From NCBI RefSeq assembly GCF_006345805.1, contig NC_043022.1:7068001-7132000 (forward strand): 64,000 nt of DNA. The letters run 5' to 3'. The position numbers and the translations under genes were made by a program. Below, piece by piece: positions 1 to 57,180 of the stretch. How positions within the stretch are numbered: position 1 is the stretch's first letter; each line of letters begins with the position of its first letter. Origin of the DNA: Octopus sinensis (lineage: Eukaryota). The notes under the pieces are model-generated. The model ran no database searches. It was not told where the DNA came from and saw only the letters and a list, made by a program, of their open reading frames with translations.

Positions 1-1082
1 CATCCATCCATCTATTCTTCCAACCAACCATCCATCCATCCATCCATTCCTCCACCCACTCATCCATCCATCTATTCTTCCAACCAACCATCCATCCATC
101 CATCCATTCCTCCACCCATCCATCCATCCATTCTTCCATCCATCAATCCATTCTTCCATCCATCCATCCATTCCTCCATCCATCCATCCATCCATTCTTC
201 CACCCATCCATCCATCCATTCCTCCATCCATCCATCCATCCATACATCCATCCATTCCTCCACTCACCCATCCATTCCTCCACTCACCCATCCATTCCTC
301 CATCCACCCATCCATCCATCCATTCCTCCACCCATCCATCCATCCATTCTTCCACCCATCCATACATCCATCCATTCCTCCATCCACCCATCCATCCATC
401 CATTCTTCCACCCATCCATACATCCATCCATTCCTCCATCCACCCATCCATCCATCCATACATCCATCCATTCCTCCACCCACCCACCCATCCATCCATC
501 CATTCTTCCACCCATCCATACAGCCATCCATTCCTCCACTCACCCATCCATCCATCATCCATCCTCCACCCACTCATCCATCCATCTATTCTTCCAACCA
601 ACCATCCATCCATCCATCCATTCCTCCACCCACTCATCCATCCATCTATTCTTCCAACCAACCATCCATCCATCCATCCATTCCTCCCCTCCCATCCATC
701 CATCCATTCTCCATCATCCCATTCTCACACCATCCATCCATCCATCCTCCATCCATCCCCATCCATTCTTCCACCATCCATCCATTCCTCCCTCCATCTC
801 CATCCCATCCATTCCTCCATCACCCATCCATCCATCCATCCTCACCCATCCATCATCCATTCTTCCACCCATCCATACATCCATCATTCCTCCATCCACC
901 CTCCATCCATCCATTCTTCCACCCATCCATACATCATCCATCCTCCATCCACCATCCATCCATCCATACATCCATCTCCTCACCCACCCCCCATCCATCC
1001 ATCCATTCTTCCACCCATCCATACAGCCATCCATTCCTCCACTCACCCATCCATCCATCCATTCCTCCATCCACCCAAACAT
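1..1082. repeat. Degenerate (CCAT)n/(GGAT)n tetranucleotide satellite with CATTC(C/T)TCCA variants
   Basis: Directly visible tandem repeat. It explains all W/M/D/G-rich ORFs here. Confidence 0.97.
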
Positions 1083-3084: not shown

Positions 3085-3265
3085 CGTCGTTAGACTGTGG
3101 CCCTGCTGGGGCATCGCCTTGAAAAATATTTAATCGAGTGAATCGACTCCAGGACATCTCTGTAAAACCTGGTACCTATTTTGTCGGTATCTTTTGCCGA
3201 ACCGCTATCTTACGGAAGACATTAAACACAGTAACACCGGTTATCAAGCAGTGGTGACACACGCA

Positions 3266-3472: not shown

Positions 3473-5520
3473 TATTTCATTACATTTGCCATAAAGGCAG
3501 TACATAGAGTAAAGTAGCTTTGCGGGCTGGACGAGGACATTAATGAAATGAATGAGAATGAAAGAAAGATGATAAGGATGGGAGAAGACAAAAAGCGCCC
3601 GCCGACTTCTGCTTCTCTAAAACATTGTTCTTTAAAACCAAACACAAAACGAGGTATTAAACCTCTTACAACTCCTATAACTTTTCAATTTTTGGACTTA
3701 ACAGTCCATTACAAACAACAACATAGTTCAATAATTACATATAATATAAATACAATACACAAAGCCCCTCCTCCCAGACCTGGCTTACACTTCCCTTAGG
3801 CAATACACCAGCTCTAGGTCGGGGCCCCTGAAGGCATATCTAAACATGTCCTTTGAGAAGGTGTTCATTACCCTGACCATAGCGACATCCGATAGTCACC
3901 TGCGAAGGCCACTCCTCGTCCCCTGACCAGGGCATGGGCTCCTCCCTCCGGAAAGCCAGCTTCTTTATTTTATCAAATTAGCCATGGAGACCTTACACTT
4001 ACATCCTCTTCCATCCTCCACGCCTCTTTCAAAATTGAATCGAGTTCCGTGTCAGCGTTGCCCGGGTACAAGCTATATTACTCATTGAGCCCCTTCAGCC
4101 TAAACGTCACGTCAAGCGTTACGGCCTCCACAGCAATCTGCGGAGGCCATTCGGGATCCTGTGTGAAGGCTAAAGGTGCTCCCTTATGGTGCTTTTCCAT
4201 CACCTTTTCAATCTCTCCGCCTCAATAGAAGAAATCAATACTTCGTCTTCCTCCGGGGGCGGGATATCCAATTCTTCCATTGGCGGCACAGTTCCCGCCA
4301 ACGGTATTTCTTCTCCTGCCGGTGGCACAACCCCAACCGACGTAGTTCCGGGACATTCCGGTACTATGTCACCGACTACCGGCAATGTACCGTTTCTCTT
4401 CCTCTTCCTCTTTTTCTTCTTTTTAGCTGAGGGAGGGTGCGTTTCCTCTGTGACCGGGAGATTCGCCTTCCGCTCTTCATCCCTAGGATCCTTCGGTGAG
4501 CACCCATTGTTACTCACCTTCCTCTTTCGGCCTCTGTTTGAGGAGTCCTCCGCTTCCTCGGCCGCCTTCAGTCCCTCTTCTACAGAGGTCTCGCTCAACT
4601 GCTCCGGGACCTTATTTTGTTCCCGGGGACAGTTTTTCTTTATATAGCCGGACTCCAGACACCGATGATACCTGGGGGGGGGGCGACCCTCAAGTATTAC
4701 CGGGTACCTGCACCCGGCTATTTTCAAAAAATCTGGCAAAACCAGATTGGCTGATTGGGTCCAAAGGGTCAAAACAGCTTTTGACCCAACCCAATCAGCC
4801 GCAGGAAGAACTTTTACATTAAGAAGCTTGGTCCCGCTCTCACCCAAACCCCGGCAGATAGTCTCCCTTATCCACTCGGGTTTTATCCCGGGTGGCAGAC
4901 CCAAGCTTTCGTCAATCTCCTCCCACAATACGTGGGAAGAAACAAAATTTCCTCACCCTCCAAGGGTTGACTAGCAAATTTGTGAGCCATTTCAGGGGTA
5001 TCAAATAGCAACCACACCGTTGTATATCTGACACCCCTGGAAATGAATTTAATTGTTGGCAACTTCTTTTCAATTGCCGTCTTTTCGAATAGGGCGATAG
5101 TGTCGAGTGACTTGGAGTAGGTTCTCAACACCACCGTCCTATCTTCACGGTCTTTCAACCACTTTTTGGGCAGTATAATCTCCCACTCCAAAACTTTGTC
5201 TTTTTCATTGCCATGTTTCCCTTTTCTTTTTTTTTTTTTGAAAATATGTTCAAAATAAAACTTAAAAAGCGAGAAGAAAAAAGAAATCAAAAGAAAGTCA
5301 CAATAAACAAAAAGGAGAAAGTCAAATAAAGTTTAGAAGAAAGAAAGTCAATAGTTCAGGAACACAGCAAAAAAAAAAAAAAATCTTCCGGCCATTCGGT
5401 ACTCCCGGCCTAGGTTGAACCCGGAACGCTACAACTGGAACACAACTTCCACAAAAATTGATATACAAATTGTTCAATCTTCGGAGGCAAAGACACTCCT
5501 CCAAACAGCAGTTCTCACTA
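3473..5520 (-). mobile_element. ORF1-only non-LTR element (L1/Tx1-type ORF1, HAL1-like), degenerate
   Basis: Frameshifted ORF1 followed by a U-rich 3' region ending in AATAAA at 3471-3476. No endonuclease or RT frame seen. The 5' boundary is uncertain. Confidence 0.55.
3830..5220 (-). pseudogene. Disrupted gag-like ORF1 (about 450 codons) with decayed CCHC knuckle and basic tract
   Basis: ORFs 4883-5290 and 4200-4928 join by frameshift. YHRCLESGYIKKNCP is C-x2-C-x4-H-x4-C with two substitutions; KKKKKRKRKR tract present. Coding-like sequence continues past 4200 in shifted frames. Confidence 0.65.
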
Positions 5521-8714: not shown

Positions 8715-9100
8715 CTCTTTACTCTTTTCTCTTTTACTTGTTTCAGTCATTTTCACTGCGGCCATGCTGGAGCACCACCTTTAATCGAGCAAATCGACCC
8801 GGGACTTATTCTTTGTAAGCCCAGTACTTATTCTATCGGTCTCTTTTGCCGAACCGCTAAGTGACGGGGACATAAACACACCAGCATCGGTTGTCAAGCA
8901 ATACTAGGGGGACAGACACAGACACACAAACACACATATATATATATACATATATACGACAGGCTTCTTTCAGTTTCCGTCTACCAAATCCACTCACAAT
9001 GCTTTGGTCGGCCCGAGGCTATAGTAGGAGACACTTGCCCAAGTGGGACTGAACCCGGAACCATGTGGTTGGTAATCAAGCTACTTACCACACAGCCACA
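8715..9100 (-). mobile_element. SINE family A
   Basis: Near full-length match to the other family A copies. Confidence 0.9.
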
Positions 9101-13617: not shown

Positions 13618-13812
13618 ATACAAAATGAGAAAATGGAGAAACATACCTAAATCAATCATCAACCATCAGATAATACCCAATCAATACTTTATTAAACCAT
13701 TACACCACAGCAATGTTATCATTGCTGTGGTGTAATGGTTTAATAAAGTATTGATTGGGTATTATCTGATGGTTGATGATTGATTTAGGTATGTTTCTCC
13801 ATTTTCTCATTT

Positions 13813-13817
<5 letters not shown>
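13618..13817. repeat. Perfect inverted repeat: 98-bp arms, 4-nt spacer
   Basis: 13618-13715 is the exact reverse complement of 13720-13817; spacer TTAT. Confidence 0.97.
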
Positions 13818-13855
<38 letters not shown>

Positions 13856-14173
13856 AGTACAAAGTAAGATAGGGGTTATGGGTGTAACCCACTATGGGAT
13901 ATCATTTATCCAATATACTGTTGGTAAAGTACCCAAATTCTTAATACATAAATGTTTTTAATTGCAATGCAATTAATTCATTTATTGTACTAAATGTATA
14001 TATAACCAAGAATTGGTTTAATTAATTTATACTACGACTTTTAAAATCTGTATTTGTATTATTATCTTATCTTTTGATTTATATAATATTTTTGTATGCT
14101 TTTGATGTTCTCATTTGTAAAATGAATAAATAATCCAACATTATAATATCTGTAAGTTGATGAACAATACAAG

Positions 14174-14214
<41 letters not shown>

Positions 14215-14253
14215 GTATGTATAATTGTATGTGTGTGTGCATGTGTGTGCAAG

Positions 14254-14287
<34 letters not shown>

Positions 14288-14835
14288 TATGTATGTGTAA
14301 TTGTATGTGTGTGCATGTGTGTGTGTGTGTGTGTATGTGTGTGTGTATACATACTACATATCTAAACATACAATAACAACAAATGAATTTGTGATTCACT
14401 GCAACTCTTTCAGGTTCAGGTTTTTCTTCTTTTCTTTTTTTTTTTTTTTTGCCTTTTGATGAACAGAAGTGTTACATCATGGGAGAAAATAAAAGCAGAA
14501 AATGTTTTCAGCAGGTGAATACAGCTAAAAAAATTAATAATTAGAACTAAAGAACCCCCCAATCCACATTTGGTCAGAGAGTGTATCCATGTGTGGCCTT
14601 GATGACTCACTGTGTAATTCAGTCAGCAATTTATGAATGTATGCGTAACAGAACAAATTCGTGTTTACTTTCGTGAGTACGTATCTGTCGTTATATGTTG
14701 TTTGCACACGACAGCTCTATCGCTGAACGACCTGTACTGATTTCATATATTATCTAAAGTTACTCTAATTCTCTTGAAACCCAGAAATTACATACATATA
14801 TATACATGGGGCAAGCGAAAGCGAAATCGAATTGA

Positions 14836-20812: not shown

Positions 20813-21363
20813 CAGCAAGACTTTTGTTAGCCGCTCTCCAGCCATCTATTTAAAACTGTATACAGCTATGGTACGACCACACTTGGAATTCGCATCATCA
20901 GTTTGGAACCCCTATCTTGCTCAGAACATTGACCTCCTGGAATCTGTCCAGAGACGTGCAACCAAACGCATACCCTCCATCAGACACCTACCGTATTCTG
21001 AGCGCCTTGTTTCCCTGGGCATGGATTCACTGAAGCTCCGGCGTCTGGCGACGGACTTGGTAAGCACCCACAAAGTTATCAACCACCTCACCAACAACAA
21101 CACTGAACACCTTTTTGATCTCCATGTGTCTAACACATGTGGACATGCCTACAAAGTCAGAAAACAACACAGCTCCCATGATTTTCGGAAACATTTTTTC
21201 ACGCTCAGAGTTGCTGAAGCATGGAACAAACTGCCTGCGTCAGTTGTTGACTGCCATGACACTGCATCCTTTAAGGCCCTCATGCTTTCCGAAATCCGCC
21301 GAAACTACACCTGATTATATATACACTTTAGATGAGTTGTAGTGCACCTGAGCACTGTACACA

Positions 21364-21393
<30 letters not shown>
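20813..21393 (+). mobile_element. CR1 LINE 3' fragment (ORF2 C-terminus, 3' UTR, (ATT)n tail)
   Basis: LYTAMVRPHLEFASSVWNP...RRL..DL...RKHFFTLRVAEAWNKLP are typical CR1 C-terminal motifs. Confidence 0.93.
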
Positions 21394-21395
<2 letters not shown>

Positions 21396-21747: not shown

Positions 21748-21974
21748 GTGCGTGTGTGTATGTGTTTGTGTGTCTGTCTTTGTTCCCCTAGCATTGCTTG
21801 ACAACCGATGCTGGTGTGTTTACGTCCCCGTCACTTAGCGGTTCGGCAAAAGAGACCGATAGAATAAGTACTGGGCTTACAAAGAATAAGTCCCGGGGTC
21901 GATTTGCTCGACTAAAGGCGGTGCTCCAGTATGGCCGCAGTCAAATGACTGAAGCAAGTAAAAGAGTAAAAGAG
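21549..21974 (+). mobile_element. SINE family A, full length
   Basis: Head-to-tail match to the family. Confidence 0.92.
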
Positions 21975-25604: not shown

Positions 25605-25890
25605 ACCAACCACCTCACCAACAACAACACTGAACACCTTTTTGATCTCCATGTGTCTAACACACCTGGACATGCCTACAAAGTCAGAAAACAACACAGC
25701 TCCCATGACTTTCGGAAACATTTTTTCACGCTCAGAGTTGCTGAAGCATGGAACAAACTGCCTGCGTCAGTCGTTGACTGCCATGACACTGCATCCTTTA
25801 AGGCCCTCATGCTTTCCGAAATCCGCCGAAACTACACCTGATTATATATACACTTTAGATGAGTTGTAGTGCACCTGAGCACTGTACACA

Positions 25891-25934
<44 letters not shown>
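25605..25934 (+). mobile_element. CR1 3' fragment
   Basis: Near-identical to the 3' end of 20813-21393; (ATT)n tail. Confidence 0.92.
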
Positions 25935-26960: not shown

Positions 26961-27661
26961 TATATATAAAAAAACACCCACTTTCTCAGGGATTCTCTTC
27001 CCTTGAGGGGAATTTCTCACGCCACCCTTAGCAAACCCTATTTTTCACTACTTCTTAAACTAAAAACAACCGCAGGTGGCAACTGCAGTGAGCACCAATG
27101 CAACACAATAAACTGATGGCAAGATGTCATGCAAGATGATACATTGGTAACTAATCCGAAATCAGACCGATTTTAATACCGAAACTATTAAAGTCAAACT
27201 ATTATATAAGAGGGATGAACCATTAACAATGGACATCTATTATGCTAGAAGATCTGCTATGGTCTTATATGCTACACCACTGGTTTTAAATTCATATTAA
27301 TCAAATATATATATATATACGTATAGATGTATACATATATGTATGTTCAATGATTATGTATGACTGCGGCCATGCTGGAGCACTGCCTTTAGTCGAGCAA
27401 ATCGACCCCGGGACAATACAGCAGAGGGAAAACTGTGAGCTTTTGTTGTGGCCCACAGAACTGTCCAGCAGATCAGCTGGTTTTTCGTTAATTACCGTAG
27501 AATTTATTTTCTTTCGTGTACCAAATTTGTGTGCGTGCGTGAGCATGTCTGCATGCATGCATGCGCATGTGTATGTGTGTTTGTCTGTGTGCATACTTGC
27601 ATGTGTGTCTGTGTGCCTGCATGTTTGTGTGTATATGTGAGTTTGTGCATGTGTATATATA

Positions 27662-28546: not shown

Positions 28547-28894
28547 CTACATACTCACATACTCACAGTCGCATGCACGCACGCACACAACACAAGCACG
28601 CAAACACAGACACACACGCTGGTGCACACACACACACACCTGCCCACCAATATACAAATGAACTCACCAAACACAAACATGCCCGTGCACCCACACACAT
28701 ACGTACACATGCACATATGCAGGAATGCACACACAGACGGATGCATGCACACGTGAGCGTGTGTGGTGCATCCTTGCATGCGCGTTTCCATGTGTGTTTG
28801 TATATGTGCGTATGTGTACGTGCCTGTGTGTTTGTGGATGTGTGTGTGCATGTTTTCCTCTCTGTGTGTATATAATAATGAAATTATTGTATAC

Positions 28895-30791
28895 AATGCT
28901 CGGGTGCACCACAAGGTGCTCGGGTGCACCGCAAGGTGCTCAGGTGCACCACAAAGTGCTCGGGTGCACCACAAGGTGCTCAGGTGCACCACAACGTGCT
29001 CGGGTGCACCACAAGGTGCTCAGGTGCACCACAAAGTGCTCCGGTGCACCACAAGGTGCTCAGGTGCACCACAAGGTGCTCAGCTGCACCACAAGGTGCT
29101 CGGGTGCACCACAAAGTGCTCAGGTGCACCACAAGGTGCTCAGGTGCACCACAAAGTGCTCAGGTGCACCACAAAGTGCTCAGGTGCACCGCAAGGTGCT
29201 CAGGTGCACCACAAGGTGCTCAGGTGCACCACAAGGTGCTCAGGTGCACCACAAAGTGCTCGGGTGTATCACAAGGTGCTCAGGTGCACCACAAGGTGCT
29301 CGGGTGCACCACAAGGTGCTCAGGTGCACCACAAAGTGCTCGGGTGTATCACAAGGTGCTCGGGTGCACCACAAGGTGCTCAGGTGCACCACAAAGTGCT
29401 CGGGTGCACCACAAGGTGCTCAGGTGCACCACAAGGTGCTCAGGTGCACCACAAAGTGCTCGGGTGCACCACAAGGTGCTCAGGTGCACCACAAAGTGCT
29501 CGGGTGCACCACAAGGTGCTCAGGTGCACCACAAAGTGCTCGGGTGCACCACAAGGTGCTCAGGTGCACCACAAGGTGCTCAGGTGCACCACAAAGTGCT
29601 CGGGTGCACCACAAGGTGCTCAGGTGCACCACAAAGTGCTCGGGTGCACCACAAGGTGCTCAGGTGCACCACAAAGTGCTCGGGTGCACCACAAGGTGCT
29701 CGGGTGCACCACAAGGTGCTCAGGTGCACCACAAAGTGCTCGGGTGCACCACAAGGTGCTCAGGTGCACCACAAAGTGCTCGGGTGCACCACAAGGTGCT
29801 CGGGTGCACCACAAAGTGCTCAGGTGCACCACAAGGTGCTCGGGTGCACCACAAAGTGCTCAGGTGCACCACAAGGTGCTCAGGTGCACCACAAAGTGCT
29901 CAGGTGCACCACAAAGTGCTCAGGTGCACCACAGGTGCTCAGGTGCACCACAAGTGCTCGGGTGCACCACAAGTGCTCAGGTGCACCACAAAGTGCTCAG
30001 GTGCACCACAAGGTGCTCAGGTGCACCACAAAGTGCTCAGGTGCACCACAAAGTGCTCAGGTGCACCACAAGGTGCTCAGGTGCACCACAAAGTGCTCAG
30101 GTGCACCACAAGGTGCTCAGGTGCACCACAAAGTGCTCAGGTGCACCACAAGGTGCTCAGGTGCACCACAAAGTGCTCAGGTGCACCACAAGGTGCTCAG
30201 GTGCACCACAAGATGCTCAGGTGCACCACAAAGTGCTCAGGTGCACCACAAGGTGCTCAGGTGCACCACAAAGTGCTCAGGTGCATCACAAAGTGCTCAG
30301 GTGCACCACAAAGTGCTCAGGTGCACCACAAAGTGCTCAGGTGCACCACAAGGTGCTCAGGTGCACCACAAAGTGCTCAGGTGCACCACAAGGTGCTCAG
30401 GTGCACCACAAGGTGCTCAGGTGCACCACAAAGTGCTCAGGTGCACCACAAGGTGCTCAGGTGCACCACAAGGTGCTCAGGTGCACCACAAGGTGCTCAG
30501 GTGCACCACAAGGTGCTCAGGTGCACCACAAGGTGCTCAGGTGCACCACAAAGTGCTCAGGTGCACCACAAGGTGCTCAGGTGCACCACAAAGTGCTCAG
30601 GTGCACCACAAAGTGCTCAGGTGCACCACAAGGTGCTCAGGTGCACCACAAAGTGCTCAGGTGCACCACAAGGTGCTCAGGTGCACCACAAGGTGCTCAG
30701 GTGCACCACAAAGTGCTCAGGTGCACCACAAGGTGCTCAGGTGCACCACAAGGTGCTCGGGTGCACCACAAGGTGCTCAGGTGCACCACAA
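28895..30791. repeat. 20-bp minisatellite, about 95 units, (A/G)GTGCTC(A/G)GGTGCACCACAA
   Basis: Directly visible; 1897 bp including three 19-bp units near 29930-29980. Confidence 0.98.
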
Positions 30792-31321
30792 TATATATTC
30801 GTGTGTGTGTGAGCATGTGTGTATATGCGTTTGAGTGGGAATTCTATAAAATAGGTTCATAAAAATACATTCAAACAAAAATCAGAAATGAAAATGAAAA
30901 AGCAAAAAATCTTTTGTTTTATTTTTTTCCATCTTTTTTATTTGTTTTATTGAAACTCCCAAATCTTTCAAATGTTTTTTCTCAAAGTCTTCAGTTTCCT
31001 TGCAACTTGTTTCCCTAAAAAGAAAGAATTTGTTTTTTTTTTCTTTGCCTTCAACAGGTAAATATGTTGTGTTTCTCTTTGTCTTTCTTCATTTCAACTT
31101 TTTTGTTTTTATCTTTACAATTTCAGTTTATTTGTTTTTATTCTTTATCATTATTCTTGTTGGGTGGTCACTGTTTTTCAAACGTATGATGATAAGATTT
31201 ATTGTGAGAGAAGCTGACAGACAGCAACTGTGATAACAGTTTGAGCAGAGATGATCGAGATGTTAATTTTAGCAATGATGATGATGATAATGATGATGAT
31301 GATGGTGGTATTGTAGTGTCA

Positions 31322-31655
31322 TGGCTCAGTGGTTAGAGCGTCAAGCTTACGATCGTGAGGTTGTGAGCTCAAATCCCGGACCAGGCTGTGTGTTGTGTTC
31401 TCGAGCAAGGCACTTTATTTCACGTTGCTCCAGTTCACTCAGCTGTAGAAATGAGTTGCGACGTCACTGGTGCCAAGCTGTATCGGCCCCTTTGCCTTTC
31501 CCTTGGATAACACTGGTGGTGTGGAGAGGGGAGACCGGTATGCATGGGCGACTGCTGGTCTTCCATAAACAACGTTGCCCGGACTTGTGTCTAGGAGGGT
31601 AACTTTCTAGGTGCAATCCCATGGTCATTCATGACCGAAGGGGGTCTTTACCCTT
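31322..31655 (+). mobile_element. SINE family D, full length
   Basis: tRNA-like head tggctcagtggttagagc...; central gagcaaggcactttatttcac...ctcagctg; TSD TAGTGTCA at 31314-31321 and 31656-31663. Confidence 0.85.
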
Positions 31656-31738
31656 TAGTGTCAGGAATTAAAGCATTGGTAATAGTACTTAGTCAGTGGT
31701 GATGATGATGATGATGATGAAAGTGTTTAGGGGTCAAA

Positions 31739-31885
31739 ATTTTATTCTAAGAATCATTGCTGTGAGGTGCATCTGCCTCTTTATTATTTTTTTTGTGGGG
31801 GGTGGGGGTCTGTCCATCAAATAAACAGGGAGATCCTTGCTTCCAAGGAAAAGGGGCAGAGGGAAAGAAAGATAAGACAAATGGC
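31739..31885 (-). other. NLK: Proximal NLK 3' UTR with two candidate AATAAA signals (about 31780-31785 and 31740-31746); true 3' end unknown
   Basis: Lies directly after the TAA. tttatt on the plus strand equals AATAAA on the minus strand. Confidence 0.5.
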
Positions 31886-31940
31886 TTACTTCCAAAGGTG
31901 GGGCAAGGGTGGAAGTTCTGATGCTTGAGCAACCTGCGAG
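31886..31940 (-). CDS. NLK: Nemo-like kinase terminal coding exon with stop codon
   Basis: Acceptor gtttgtattttgcag; phase 2 completes Ser (AG|C), then SQVAQASELPPLPHLWK-TAA. Matches the NLK C-terminus (STVAQPSEMPPSPLVWE; nemo-type SELPPSPHQWE). The preceding intron, 31941-56419, is 24.5 kb. Confidence 0.92.
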
Positions 31941-32354
31941 CTGCAAAATACAAACAAATTCCCCAGTAATGTTAGGTTAACTCACACTCACACTCTCACA
32001 CTCTCACTCACACTTGAACATACAAAAACTGATAAATCCCTTTCAAAAGAATTCCAATAAAATAAATTTTCTTTTATTTTAAAGGTTGGTGGCTGAGTAT
32101 TCCTTTTCCTCTCCAACCAAATGAACTCTTTATGTGGCTTTTTATCCTGCTAAAAATATCAGCCAAATAATACCCTACCCATATTCTATATGTTAAAGAA
32201 CATTAGATATACAGGATGGCCATGGTTGGAATACAATTGATCACAGGTCTGCTTAGTCAGAGTTGATCAGGAACTGGACAGCAACATCAAACACGTGTCT
32301 GAATTTGAGCTTCTTTCAGGGGTGGGGGTCATATGTCTTTATTAAAGCTCTGTC

Positions 32355-32976
32355 TTTTACTCGTTCCAGTCATTAGACTGTGGCCAAGCCGGAGCACCAC
32401 CTTCAGGAATTTTAGTTGAATGAATTGACCCCAGTATTTTCAAGACAACTATTTATTTTATCAATCTCTTTTGTTGAGTGGCTAAGTTATAGGGATGTAA
32501 ACACACCAACACCACTGATCAAATGGTAGTAAGGGACAAACTTTAAGGTGGCGACCTGGCAGAAACGTTAGCACGCTGGGCGAAATGCTTAGCGGTATTT
32601 CGTCTGTCGTTACGTTGTGAGTTCAAATTCCGCCGAGGTCGACTTTGCCTTTCATCCTTTCGGGGTCGATAAATTAAGTACCAGTTCCGCACTGGGGTCG
32701 ATGTAATCGACTTAATACCTATGTCTGTCCTTGTTTGTCCCCTCTATGTTTAGCCCCTTGTGGGTAGTAAAGAAATAGGTATTTCGTCTGTCGTTACGTC
32801 GTGAGTTCAAATTCCGCCGAGGTCGACTTTGCCTTTCATCCTTTCGGGGTCGATAAATTAAGTACCAGTTCCGCACTGGGGTTGATGTAATCGACTTAAT
32901 ACCTATGCCTGTCCTTGTTTGTCCCCTCTATGTTTAGCCCCTTGTGGGTAATAAAGAAATAGGTAGTAAGGGACAA

Positions 32977-34831: not shown

Positions 34832-35246
34832 CAGAGACGTGCAACCAAACGCATACCCTCCATCAGACACCTACCATATTCTGAGCGCCTTGTTTCCCTG
34901 GGCATGGATTCACTGAAGCTCCGGCGTCTGGCGACAGACTTGGTAAACACCCACAAAGTTATCAACCACCTCACCAACAACAACACTGAACACCTTTTTG
35001 ATCTCCATGTGTCTAACACACGTGGACATGCCTACAAAGTCAGAAAACAACACAGCTCCCATGACTTTCGGAAACATTTTTTCACGCTCAGAGTTGCTGA
35101 AGCATGGAACAAACTGCCTGCGTCAGTTGTTGACTGCCATGACACTGCATCCTTTAAGGCCCTCATGCTTTCCAAAATCCGCCGAAACTACACCTGATTA
35201 TATATACACTTTAGATGAGTTGTAGTGCACCTGAGCACTGTACACA

Positions 35247-35286
<40 letters not shown>
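34832..35286 (+). mobile_element. CR1 3' fragment
   Basis: Near-identical to the other CR1 copies; (ATT)n tail. Confidence 0.92.
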
Positions 35287-37070: not shown

Positions 37071-37471
37071 TCATCATCATCATCATCATCATCATCATTT
37101 AACGTCCGCTTTCCATGCTAGCATGGGTTGGATGGTTCAACTGGGGGCTGGGGAGCCCGAAGGCTGCACCAGGCCAGTCAGATCTGGCAGTGTTTCTACA
37201 GCTGGATGCCCTTTCTAACACCAACCACTCCAAGAGTGTAGTGGGTGAATTTATGTGCCACCGACACAGGTGCCAGACGAGGCTGGCAAACGGCCACGCT
37301 CGGATGGTGTTTTTTATGTGCCACCGACACAGGTGCCAGACAAGGCTGGCGAACGGCCACGATCGGATGGTGTTTGTTACGTGCCCACAGCACGGAGGCC
37401 AGTCAATGCAGTACTGGCTACGGCCACGATCGGATGGTGTTTGTTACGTGCCCACAGCACGGAGGCCAGTC
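37071..37471 (-). mobile_element. SINE family E with internal tandem duplications
   Basis: (CAT)n tail and conserved core; ~63-bp and ~55-bp units repeated. Confidence 0.85.
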
Positions 37472-42543: not shown

Positions 42544-43160
42544 TAATAATAATAATAATTGTGTACAGTGCTCAGGTGCACTACAACTCATCTAAAGTGT
42601 ATATATAATCAGGTGTAGTTTCGGCGGATTTCGGAAAGCATGAGGGCCTTAAAGGATGCAGTGTCATGGCAGTCAACAACTGATGCAGGCAGTTTATTCC
42701 ATGCTTCAGCAACTCTGAGCATGAAAAAATGTTTCCGAAAGTCATGGGAGCTGTGTTGTTTTCTGACTTTGTAGGCATGTCCACGTGTGTTAGACACATG
42801 GAGATCAAAAAGGTGTTCAGTGTTGTTGTTGGTGAGGTGGTTGATAACTTTGTGGGTGTTTACCAAGTCCGTCGCCAGACGCCGGAGCTTCAGTGAATCC
42901 ATGCCCAGGGAAACAAGGCGCTCAGAATATGGTAGGTGTCTGATGGAGGGTATGCGTTTGGTTGCACGTCTCTGGACAGATTCCAGGAGGTCAATGTTCT
43001 GAGCAAGATAGGGGTTCCAAACTGATGATGTGAATTCCAAGTGTGGTCGTACCATAGCTGTATACAGTTTTAAATAGATGGCTGGAGAGCGGCTAACAAA
43101 AGTCTTGCTGAGTGATGCCAAGACACCCTTGGCCTTCTTGACAATTTTAGAGATGATGAG
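42544..43160 (-). mobile_element. CR1 3' fragment
   Basis: ORF 42609-43121; (TAA)n tail at 42544-42560. Confidence 0.93.
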
Positions 43161-54935: not shown

Positions 54936-55198
54936 TGGGGTGGGTGGATCGCAGTGGTGACTGTCTGAGTTCCTGCGAATTGCAGCGTAATTGTCCAGCC
55001 CCTAATCTATGAAACCCTATTCGCAATGGTACCAAAACTTATCTTTCTTTGGTTATATCCACGTTGGGGTGGGTGGATCGCAGTGGTGACACAGTGTCTG
55101 AGTTCCTGCGAATTGCAGCATAATTGTCCAGCCCCTAATCTATGAAACCCTATTCGCAATGGTACCAATACTTATCTTTCTTTGGTTATATCCACGTT
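54936..55198. repeat. Tandem duplication of a ~130-bp non-microsatellite unit
   Basis: 54936-55064 and 55065-55198 are nearly identical (4-bp indel, 2 substitutions). Confidence 0.92.
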
Positions 55199-56774: not shown

Positions 56775-57180
56775 GGTGTTTTTTATGTGCCACCGACACA
56801 GGTGCCAGACGAGGCTGGCGAACGGCATCCGATCGTAGCCGTTCGCCAGCCTCGTCTGGCACCTGTGTCGGTGGCACATAAAAAACACCATCCGAGCGTG
56901 GCTGTCTGCCAGCCTCGTCTGGCACCTGTGTCGGTGGCACATAAAAAACACCATCCGAGCGTGGCCGTCTGCCAGCCTCGTCTGGCACCTGTGTCGGTGG
57001 CACATAAAATCACCCACTACACTCTCGGAGTGGTTGGCGTTAGGAAGGGCATCCAGCTGTAGAAACACAGCCAGATCAGACTGGAGCCTGGGGTAGCCCC
57101 TGGCTCCCCAGACCCCGGTCGAACCGTCCAACCCGTGCTAGCGCGGAAAACGGATGTTAAACGATGATGATGATGATGAT
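56775..57180 (+). mobile_element. SINE family E with three ~63-bp internal units and a 5' inverted segment
   Basis: 56775-56826 is the reverse complement of 56838-56889; (GAT)n tail at 57165-57180. Confidence 0.88.

What the first reader, a model, noticed from the sequence alone, without database searches (positions are those of the whole stretch)
28872..30791. Minisatellite of about 95 tandem copies of the CR1 3'-terminal stem-loop, 1.1 kb behind the NLK stop and in NLK-sense orientation
Seen: the unit AGTGCTCAGGTGCACCACAA matches 19/20 to the reverse-complemented 3' end of the CR1 copies in this window (AGTGCTCAGGTGCACTACAA, 42567-42586). The array's left edge (ataataatgaaattattgtatacaatgctc) continues the match into the CR1 (TAA)n tail (taataataattgtgtacagtgctc). 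On the LINE-sense (minus) strand, CR1 folds AGTGC-acctga-GCACT. Array units fold GGTGC-acc(t/c)ga-GCAC(C/T), so the closing A-U pair becomes G-C or G-U and pairing is kept; the other common variant lies in the loop. Established: CR1/L2-group LINEs use a 3' stem-loop plus short tandem tail for RT recognition (shown for eel UnaL2). Inference: the array grew from a CR1 3' end, by repeated template re-use during TPRT or by later slippage. A long or read-through NLK 3' UTR would carry about 95 RT-recognition hairpins, a possible RT/RNA-binding-protein sponge or a signal for mobilising host RNA.
Basis: partly seen in the sequence, partly recalled or inferred. Interest (0 to 1): 0.85.

Follow-up and report, generated by a model that had tools for sequence, protein, structure and literature searches.

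The report
Minisatellite grown from a CR1 retrotransposon tail
A 1.9-kb run of 95 copies of a 20-base unit downstream of the octopus NLK gene grew from the last 20 bases before the tail of a CR1-like jumping gene; it looks like an ordinary transposon-seeded minisatellite, and nothing here supports a function.

Summary
A 20-bp tandem array of 95 units lies at 28895-30791, 1,095 bp past the NLK stop codon, with its LINE-sense strand matching the NLK strand.

The CR1 origin is supported and sharpened. 23 units are 20/20 identical to the 3' hairpin module of a sister CR1 subfamily seen in Octopus vulgaris. The last unit runs straight into that subfamily's tail (GTATACAATAATTTCATTAT), 38/40 identical.

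Only the 20-nt module and a 23-nt tail are CR1-derived. The other flank is host (CA)n-rich DNA.

The array has dimeric higher-order structure and two variant domains, which points to DNA-level slippage or unequal exchange.

The functional idea of 95 RT-recognition hairpins acting as a sponge is not supported:
- In tandem context the local hairpin has a predicted pair probability of about 0.05.
- 94 of 95 units lack the tail that stringent LINEs also need.
- Nine AATAAA signals lie between the stop codon and the array.

A second tandem array derived from a related copy of this CR1 family (121 bp × 6.9) turned up in O. vulgaris, so such arrays recur.

Verdict: a real feature and a new member of a known kind, of low to moderate interest.

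The parts
28872..28894 (-). CR1 3' tail remnant. In LINE sense it reads GTATACAATAATTTCATTATTAT. It is present once, directly 3' of the last array unit.
   Evidence: 20/20 identical to the tail of the O. vulgaris CR1 copy at L003:10493-10512 (alignment).
28895..30791 (-). The whole minisatellite: 95 head-to-tail units of the CR1 3' hairpin module. In LINE sense the unit is TTGT-GGTGC-ACCYGA-GCACY.
   Evidence: TRF gives period 20, 94.9 copies, 93% matches. Unit census. 23 units are 20/20 identical to L003:10473-10492.
28895..29914 (-). Tail-proximal domain of 51 units. It is rich in the loop variant ACCCGA and is arranged as 40- and 60-bp higher-order blocks (unit patterns AC and AAC).
   Evidence: Unit string. 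Lag-40 identity is 0.948 against 0.912 at lag 20. The loop variant occurs in 22 of the first 54 units against 1 of the last 41, Fisher P = 6e-6.
29915..29971 (-). Three consecutive 19-bp units, each missing one T of TTGT. This marks a local block duplication and shifts the array phase by 3 bases.
29972..30791 (-). Tail-distal domain of 41 units. Almost all carry loop ACCTGA. Units ending in C and T alternate (pattern AB).
   Evidence: Position 20 changes between neighbours 65 times against 47.8 ± 4.7 expected, P about 1e-4.
30792..30850 (.). Host flank on the LINE-5' side, TA/TG-rich and low in complexity. It has no CR1 similarity. TATATA at 30792-30797 may be a target-site duplication of TATATA at 28869-28874.
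   Evidence: Local alignment to four CR1 3' regions scores 17-22, against 16-18 ± 2 for shuffles and 146-227 for positive controls. The candidate duplication is low-complexity and not significant.
28575..28871 (.). Host flank on the LINE-3' side, an imperfect (TG/CA)n region. The array sits inside one degenerate microsatellite.
31886..31942 (-). NLK last coding exon, ..SSQVAQASELPPLPHLWK followed by the stop codon.
   Evidence: Its C-terminus matches the NLK homologue P0002..SQVAQPSELPPSPHVWE.
30918..31785 (-). Nine AATAAA hexamers on the NLK strand, 101-963 nt after the stop codon and all upstream of the array. The next one on this strand is at 27503-27508.
42545..43155 (-). Comparator: a 5'-truncated young CR1 copy with the ORF2 C-terminus, a 45-nt 3' UTR, the hairpin module AGTGC-ACCTGA-GCACT and an (ATT)n tail. 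Three more copies lie at 20813-21394(+), 25607-25934(+) and 34832-35286(+).

Best explanation
This is a transposon-seeded minisatellite.

Shown: a severely 5'-truncated copy of a CR1-like LINE, or of a SINE that shares its tail, sits inside a degenerate (CA)n tract 1.1 kb downstream of the NLK stop. The copy came from the subfamily ending TTGTGGTGCACCTGAGCACT-GTATACAATAATTTCATT(ATT)n. Only the 20-nt hairpin module and the tail are CR1-derived.

Inferred: the 20-bp module then amplified to 95 copies at the DNA level, by replication slippage and unequal exchange. The unit consists of alternating inverted arms (GGTGC / GCACC, including the 8-bp palindrome GGTGCACC). These arms can pair within a unit or across neighbouring units, so single-stranded DNA forms misaligned hairpins easily.

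Inferred: variants that arose during growth (loop T>C, position 20 T>C) spread as 2- and 3-unit blocks, which gave two domains and a dimeric higher-order repeat.

Inferred: the array has no demonstrated function. It is most likely neutral DNA downstream of, or rarely within, the NLK 3' UTR.
For: - Array existence and size.
- Source: 23 units are 20/20 identical to L003:10473-10492. The last unit plus tail is 38/40 identical to L003:10473-10512. The same module sits at every CR1 3' end examined: 4 in the window, plus L002, two in L003 and L007 at about position 3173. A further, degenerate L007 copy has this module interrupted by an insertion.
- The tail is present once, at the LINE-3' end only. 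The opposite flank has no CR1 similarity.
- Post-insertion DNA-level growth: lag-40 identity exceeds lag-20; position 20 alternates with P about 1e-4; the loop variant is confined to one half with P = 6e-6; there is a run of three 19-bp units.
- Slippage-prone structure: ssDNA of both strands forms alternative intra-unit and inter-unit hairpins, z = -1.8 to -2.4.
- Precedent in the same family: the O. vulgaris copy L004:10665-11495 carries a 121-bp × 6.9 tandem array made of the ORF2 end plus the start of the 3' UTR.
- TE-derived minisatellites are common in general (PMC9659126).
- CR1 is among the recently active LINEs in O. vulgaris (PMC13282606).
Against: - The array holds a whole number of units, and its 5' boundary coincides with the first CR1-derived base. 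That is roughly a 1-in-20 coincidence under random DNA slippage.
- No microhomology explains the first 20-bp duplication. The TGT repeats would give an 18-bp period.
- Neither the orthologous empty site nor population data could be examined.
- The CR1 clade assignment rests on 3' architecture and C-terminal ORF2 homology, not on an RT phylogeny.
Confidence: 0.7

Rival explanations
1. The array, or at least its first few copies, was made by the CR1 reverse transcriptase during one target-primed reverse transcription event. The enzyme would have re-copied the hairpin module repeatedly before joining the upstream target DNA. DNA-level turnover then reshaped the array.
For: - The array is a whole number of units.
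- It starts exactly at the first CR1-derived base and ends exactly where the tail begins.
- LINE reverse transcriptases are known to slip on their 3' ends. UnaL2 re-copies its terminal UGUAA repeat (PMC1636434).
Against: - Known slippage involves the terminal short repeat, not the stem-loop. Here the tail is not part of the unit.
- Re-priming through the only available microhomology (TGT at positions 2-4 and 20-22) would give an 18-nt period, not 20.
- None of the 9 other CR1 3' ends examined has more than one module.
- The higher-order and domain structure needs DNA-level events in any case.
Confidence: 0.12
2. The array was inherited ready-made from a source element: a CR1 variant, or a CR1-dependent composite or SINE, that carries a VNTR of its hairpin module in its 3' region. 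It would then be one of many dispersed copies.
For: - A related O. vulgaris CR1 copy carries an internal 121-bp tandem array.
- SVA-like VNTR-bearing retroposons exist in other animals (own knowledge).
Against: - No CR1 sequence lies 5' of the array.
- No other module multimers occur in about 150 kb of octopod sequence examined.
- The stop-free array peptide has no relatives in the protein collection. This is weak evidence, because such ORFs are rarely called as genes.
Confidence: 0.08
3. The array is a functional RNA element of a long NLK 3' UTR. It would act as a decoy for CR1 ORF2p or other RNA-binding proteins, or as a handle that lets CR1 mobilise NLK RNA.
For: - The units are in sense orientation with respect to NLK.
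- The last unit keeps an intact module plus tail.
- 91 of 95 units can still form the 5-bp stem.
Against: - In tandem context the predicted probability of the local hairpin is about 0.05.
- 94 of 95 units lack the terminal repeat.
- Nine AATAAA signals precede the array.
- The variant pattern fits neutral turnover, including stem-breaking variants that were duplicated (29255 and 29335).
- No RNA or conservation data are available.
Confidence: 0.03

Closest known systems
Retroposon-derived minisatellites: Alu-derived human minisatellites, the mouse B1-derived VNTR family, and about 7,276 human TE-derived minisatellites, as reviewed in PMC9659126
   Same: A short internal segment of a retroposon copy is amplified in place into a tandem array. 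One edge of the array still runs into the parent element.
   Different: Here the parent is a CR1-like LINE of a cephalopod. The amplified segment is exactly the 3' hairpin module, and almost nothing else of the element is present.
Tandem repeats built from LINE 3' regions: the chicken HinfI repeat containing CR1 ORF2 and 3' UTR, and the cetacean common satellite from the L1 3' end (PMC9659126). Also the O. vulgaris CR1 121-bp array at L004:10665-11495
   Same: LINE 3'-terminal sequence converted into a tandem repeat. The L004 array comes from the same CR1 family.
   Different: Those units are 100 bp to kilobases long and include coding sequence. This unit is 20 bp and is a near-palindrome.
3' recognition elements of stringent-type LINEs: the UnaL2/ZfL2 stem-loop plus terminal repeat (PMC1636434, PMC4176376) and the amniote CR1 hairpin plus 8-bp microsatellite (PMC8665684)
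   Same: The parent element has the same layout, a short hairpin directly followed by a short-unit repeat tail and no poly(A). That terminal module is kept while the rest of the 3' UTR varies or is deleted.
   Different: - The array repeats only the hairpin part.
- The hairpin is 5 bp, against the two-part stem of about 36 nt in UnaL2.
- Binding by the octopus ORF2p is untested.
- In tandem context the hairpin is not the predicted fold.

Membership tests
TE-derived minisatellite | Head-to-tail array of a 10-100 bp unit | tested here: met
   Period 20, 94.9 copies, 93% matches.
TE-derived minisatellite | The unit is homologous to a segment of a dispersed element, and the array edge continues into that element | tested here: met
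   20/20 for 23 units and 38/40 for the last unit plus tail against L003:10473-10512. The module is present at the intact CR1 3' ends examined.
TE-derived minisatellite | Internal variant structure showing stepwise DNA-level amplification | tested here: met
   Dimeric higher-order repeat, two variant domains and a run of 19-bp units.
TE-derived minisatellite | Copy-number polymorphism among individuals (VNTR behaviour) | not testable with these tools
   No reads or second assembly could be reached. The exact array ORF is not on record.
CR1-clade LINE (the parent element) | 3' end made of a hairpin followed by a short-unit microsatellite, with no poly(A) | tested here: met
   AGTGC-ACCTGA-GCACT followed by (ATT)n in the 4 window copies. 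Relatives in L002, L003 and L007 have the same layout, and a 46%-identical relative, L006, has CACT-ACAAAG-AGTG followed by (ATTATG)n. Layout as described for CR1 in PMC8665684.
CR1-clade LINE (the parent element) | ORF2 with endonuclease and RT domains that falls in the CR1 clade in an RT phylogeny | not tested
   All copies at hand are 5'-truncated. The 170-aa C-terminal ORF has no Pfam hit. Its homologues are named 'jockey-like RT' or 'Tick transposon', and three of them (P0092, P0098, P0157) carry PF00078. The VQRRATK...FF..RV...WN.LP motif resembles the chicken CR1 C-terminus from memory. That is a lead, not a test.
CR1-clade LINE (the parent element) | The hairpin is supported by covariation | tested here: inconclusive
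   Among 6 distinct 3' ends, 96.7% of cells are paired and there is one compensatory pair (GGGC/GCCC in the second L003 copy). 83 of 500 shuffles do as well.
Functional stringent-LINE 3' recognition element (applied to the array units) | Stem-loop directly followed by the terminal repeat where reverse transcription starts | tested here: not met
   Only the last unit (28895-28914) adjoins a tail. The other 94 units are followed by another unit. Requirement as in PMC1636434.
Functional stringent-LINE 3' recognition element (applied to the array units) | The hairpin is the favoured fold of the RNA in its context | tested here: not met
   Mean pair probability is about 0.05. The hairpin appears in 0-1 of 20 units in the minimum-energy fold of 400-nt array RNA.
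Functional stringent-LINE 3' recognition element (applied to the array units) | Bound by the cognate ORF2 protein, and present in a transcript | not testable with these tools
   No RNA or binding data. Nine AATAAA signals precede the array.

The most novel reading that the evidence does not exclude
The CR1 reverse transcriptase itself synthesised the array, or its seed, by repeatedly re-copying its own 3' hairpin module in one integration event. This would be telomerase-like repeat addition on a 20-nt template. Read-through NLK transcripts that carry the array would then titrate or recruit CR1 ORF2p.
Probability: 0.07. Interest if true: 0.7.

Novelty: new member of a known kind. Interest (0 to 1): 0.25.

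Why it matters
This is a clean case where the origin of a minisatellite can be read base by base. A 43-nt retrotransposon stub seeded the array, its near-palindromic 20-nt hairpin module was amplified 95-fold, and the variant blocks record the growth.

It is useful as a likely hypervariable (VNTR) marker next to NLK, although length variation among individuals was not tested. It also shows that LINE 3' recognition hairpins are slippage-prone seeds of tandem DNA in repeat-rich cephalopod genomes. A related CR1 copy in O. vulgaris carries a second such array.

It does not currently bear on NLK regulation or on the control of retrotransposition.

Tried and rejected
1. Orthologous locus. The only close NLK hit was an Argonauta hians fragment (P0001, locus L001). 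Its 10 kb of downstream sequence contains neither the last NLK exon nor any 3' UTR similarity. No Octopus NLK protein was returned, so the empty-site test could not be done.

2. Other arrays.
- The stop-free plus-strand array peptide found no homologues.
- The exact 699-aa array ORF and a 97-aa CR1 ORF from the window are not on record.
- About 90 kb of O. sinensis, O. vulgaris and other octopod-like loci (L002-L007) contain no second array of this unit.

3. CR1 classification by Pfam. There is no hit for the C-terminal ORF. The neighbouring L003 ORF turned out to be a C2H2 zinc-finger gene, not LINE sequence.

4. Rfam and tRNA scans of the window found nothing.

5. CR1 sequence on the far (LINE-5') side of the array. 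Rejected, because alignment scores are at shuffle level.

6. Microhomology-mediated template switching as the origin of the first duplication. Rejected as a simple explanation, because the available TGT repeats predict an 18-nt unit, not 20.

7. 'Compensatory change keeps the stem' as evidence for selection. Rejected.

8. L004 as the NLK orthologue, because a Pkinase gene lies next to the CR1 copy. Rejected, because only repeats match the window.

Full report
**1. What is there**

Tandem Repeats Finder reports a single array at 28897-30791 with period 20, 94.9 copies, 93% matches and no indels at its resolution. Parsing on the GTGCTC anchor gives 95 units from 28895 to 30791.

In LINE sense (the minus strand) the unit is TTGT-GGTGC-ACCYGA-GCACY. 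Four unit types account for 82 of the 95 units.

Only two positions are commonly polymorphic:
- Position 13, in the loop: T in 71 units, C in 23.
- Position 20, the last base: C in 53 units, T in 41.

Position 5 is G in all 95 units.

**2.

The window's 20-mer AGTGCTCAGGTGCACTACAA occurs exactly at 21337, 25864, 35220 and 42567. With up to 3 mismatches it hits 92 array units, against none expected in shuffles.

Those four sites are the 3' ends of nearly identical, 5'-truncated LINE copies. Each has an ORF2 C-terminus, a UTR of about 45 nt, the module TTGT-AGTGC-ACCTGA-GCACT, then GTACACA and an (ATT)n tail.

The 170-aa ORF has homologues in O. sinensis and O. vulgaris that are named 'jockey-like RT'. 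More distant homologues carry PF00078.

The layout of a hairpin followed by a short-unit repeat tail with no poly(A) is the one described for CR1 (PMC8665684). CR1 is listed among the recently active LINEs of O. vulgaris (PMC13282606).

I could not do an RT phylogeny, because no copy at hand contains the RT domain and the C-terminus has no Pfam family. 'CR1-like' is therefore well motivated but not formally tested.

**3.

Related copies were fetched from O. sinensis (L002), O. vulgaris (L003, L004) and an ENA contig (L007). They show a sister subfamily whose 3' end reads TTGTGGTGCACCTGAGCACT-GTATACAATAATTTCATTAT(ATT).
- 23 array units are 20/20 identical to its module.
- The last array unit plus the left flank, in LINE sense TTGTGGTGCACCCGAGCATT-GTATACAATAATTTCATTATTAT (28872-28914), is 38/40 identical to L003:10473-10512.
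- The window's own young subfamily fits less well. It differs at position 5 and lacks AATTTC in the tail.

The progenitor already had G at position 5 with a G·U closing pair.

**4. How much of the locus is CR1**

Only the 20-nt module (×95) and the 23-nt tail are CR1-derived.

The 200 nt on the LINE-5' side of the array align to four CR1 3' regions no better than shuffled sequence does. Scores are 17-22 against 16-18 ± 2 for shuffles, while positive controls score 146-227.

Both flanks are imperfect (CA/TG)n with TA runs, so the insertion lies inside a degenerate microsatellite. A possible 5-6-bp target-site duplication (TATATA at 28869-28874 and 30792-30797) is too low in complexity to count as evidence.

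A CR1-dependent SINE with the same tail cannot be told apart from the LINE as the donor.

**5. How it grew**

The variants are not scattered at random:
- Identity at lag 40 (0.930 overall; 0.948 in the left half) exceeds identity at lag 20 (0.912).
- Position 20 changes between neighbouring units 65 times, against 47.8 ± 4.7 expected under permutation (P about 1e-4).
- The loop-C variant occurs in 22 of the 54 tail-proximal units and in 1 of the 41 distal units (Fisher P = 6e-6).
- Three adjacent units share the same 1-bp deletion.
- A stem-breaking double variant (GATAC) occurs twice, 80 bp apart.

This is the signature of block duplication by slippage or unequal exchange after the variants arose.

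The unit is a chain of alternating inverted arms, GGTGC-loop-GCACC-TTGT-GGTGC and so on, and includes the 8-bp palindrome GGTGCACC. Single-stranded DNA of either strand forms several alternative hairpins within and between units, with z = -1.8 to -2.4. That gives a plausible physical cause of misalignment.

**6. What is not explained**

The array is a whole number of units, and it begins at the first CR1-derived base. There is no microhomology that would generate a 20-bp first duplication, because the TGT repeats at positions 2-4 and 20-22 would give 18 bp.

This leaves room for an RT-made seed, for example template re-use during TPRT. I rate that at about 0.12. Three points count against it:
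- Documented LINE RT slippage concerns the terminal short repeat (PMC1636434).
- The tail is not part of the unit.
- None of the nine other CR1 3' ends examined has more than one module.

**7. The functional proposal**

Isolated units fold into the 5-bp hairpin at -5.6 to -7.1 kcal/mol, which is no better than shuffles.

In 400-nt stretches of array RNA the hairpin has a mean pair probability of about 0.05 and appears in 0-1 of 20 units in the minimum-energy structure. The arms pair across units instead.

C at position 20 strengthens the CR1 stem, but it equally creates the competing junction hairpin GCACC-UUGU-GGUGC.

For the best-studied stringent LINEs, both the stem-loop and the adjacent terminal repeat are needed (PMC1636434, PMC4176376). 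Only the last of the 95 units has a tail.

On the NLK strand there are nine AATAAA hexamers 101-963 nt after the stop codon, all before the array. The next one is 4.4 kb from the stop. Whether any transcript reaches the array cannot be decided from sequence.

Conservation of the hairpin among six distinct CR1 3' ends is high. 96.7% of cells are paired, and there is one compensatory GGGC/GCCC pair. This is not statistically distinguishable from chance with so few sequences.

**8. Context**

NLK identity and geometry are confirmed:
- Exons at about 63.1, 58.4 and 56.4 kb on the minus strand match nemo-like kinases.
- The last exon ends at 31886-31888. Its peptide matches the C-terminus of homologue P0002.
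- The array's LINE sense is the NLK strand.

**9. Is it unusual?**

TE-derived minisatellites are common and well reviewed (PMC9659126). In the small sample of octopus DNA fetched here, an O. vulgaris CR1 copy of the same family carries a 121-bp × 6.9 tandem array built from the ORF2 end and the start of the 3' UTR (L004:10665-11495). A SINE-like element next to it is amplified as 94 bp × 4.6.

So this array is a tidy and unusually legible example of a known process, not a new kind of element.

**10. Verdict**

- Observation: confirmed.
- Origin from a CR1-like 3' end: supported and refined.
- Growth: mainly at the DNA level.
- Functional sponge or mobilisation idea: unsupported, and partly contradicted by the folding and tail arguments.
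- Interest: 0.25.
- Novelty: new member of a known kind.

Noticed in passing
L004:10665-11495 (O. vulgaris, GCA_951406725.2): A CR1 copy of the same family carries a tandem array of 121 bp × 6.9 copies. The unit is the last ~90 nt of ORF2 plus the first ~30 nt of the 3' UTR. This is a second, independent CR1-3'-region tandem repeat.
   Followed up: partly
window 42562-42608 compared with L003:10367-10472 and L002:10727-10842: The window's young CR1 subfamily has lost about 85 nt of the 3' UTR compared with the O. vulgaris and O. sinensis copies. It keeps only the terminal module of about 45 nt (..GATGAG-TTGT-hairpin-tail). This fits the idea that the module is the part that matters for retrotransposition.
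   Followed up: partly
L001:10001-10442 (Argonauta hians, BAAFZT010000031.1): Three NLK coding exons, which lie kilobases apart in the window (about 63.1, 58.4 and 56.4 kb), are contiguous here. The sequence then continues into intron-like sequence after ..KTFAR. This is either intron loss in Argonauta or a partly processed retrocopy.
   Followed up: partly
window 31320-31657: A dispersed SINE-like repeat sits inside the presumed NLK 3' UTR, between the stop codon and the array. It is 89% identical to L003:213-529, and its plus-strand ORF reads AQWLERQAYDREVVSSNPGPG, which looks tRNA-like. ARAGORN and Rfam do not call it.
   Followed up: partly
L004:7407-7841: A 94-bp segment of a dispersed repeat (matching window 21806-21903, 8793-8889 and others at 95-99%) is tandemly amplified 4.6 times in O. 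vulgaris. This is another TE-derived tandem array.
   Followed up: no
window 37251-37452 and 56826-57009; 32594-32965; 54936-55198: Short tandem arrays lie inside dispersed elements: 63 bp × 3 at two loci whose TRF consensus units look reverse-complementary to each other (not checked by alignment), 184 bp × 2, and 133 bp × 2.
   Followed up: no
window 1-1077: A long (CATC)n microsatellite of about 273 copies, 72% matches, lies at the window start.
   Followed up: no
window 28725-30862 (+): The array has no stop codon in any plus-strand frame, which gives three mechanical ORFs of 636-699 aa that encode a 20-aa repeat. The ORFs have no homologues and should not be annotated as genes.
   Followed up: yes
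L003:8295-9182, 3804-4583, 13694-14557: A cluster of C2H2 zinc-finger ORFs surrounds the CR1 copies in the O. vulgaris locus.
   Followed up: no
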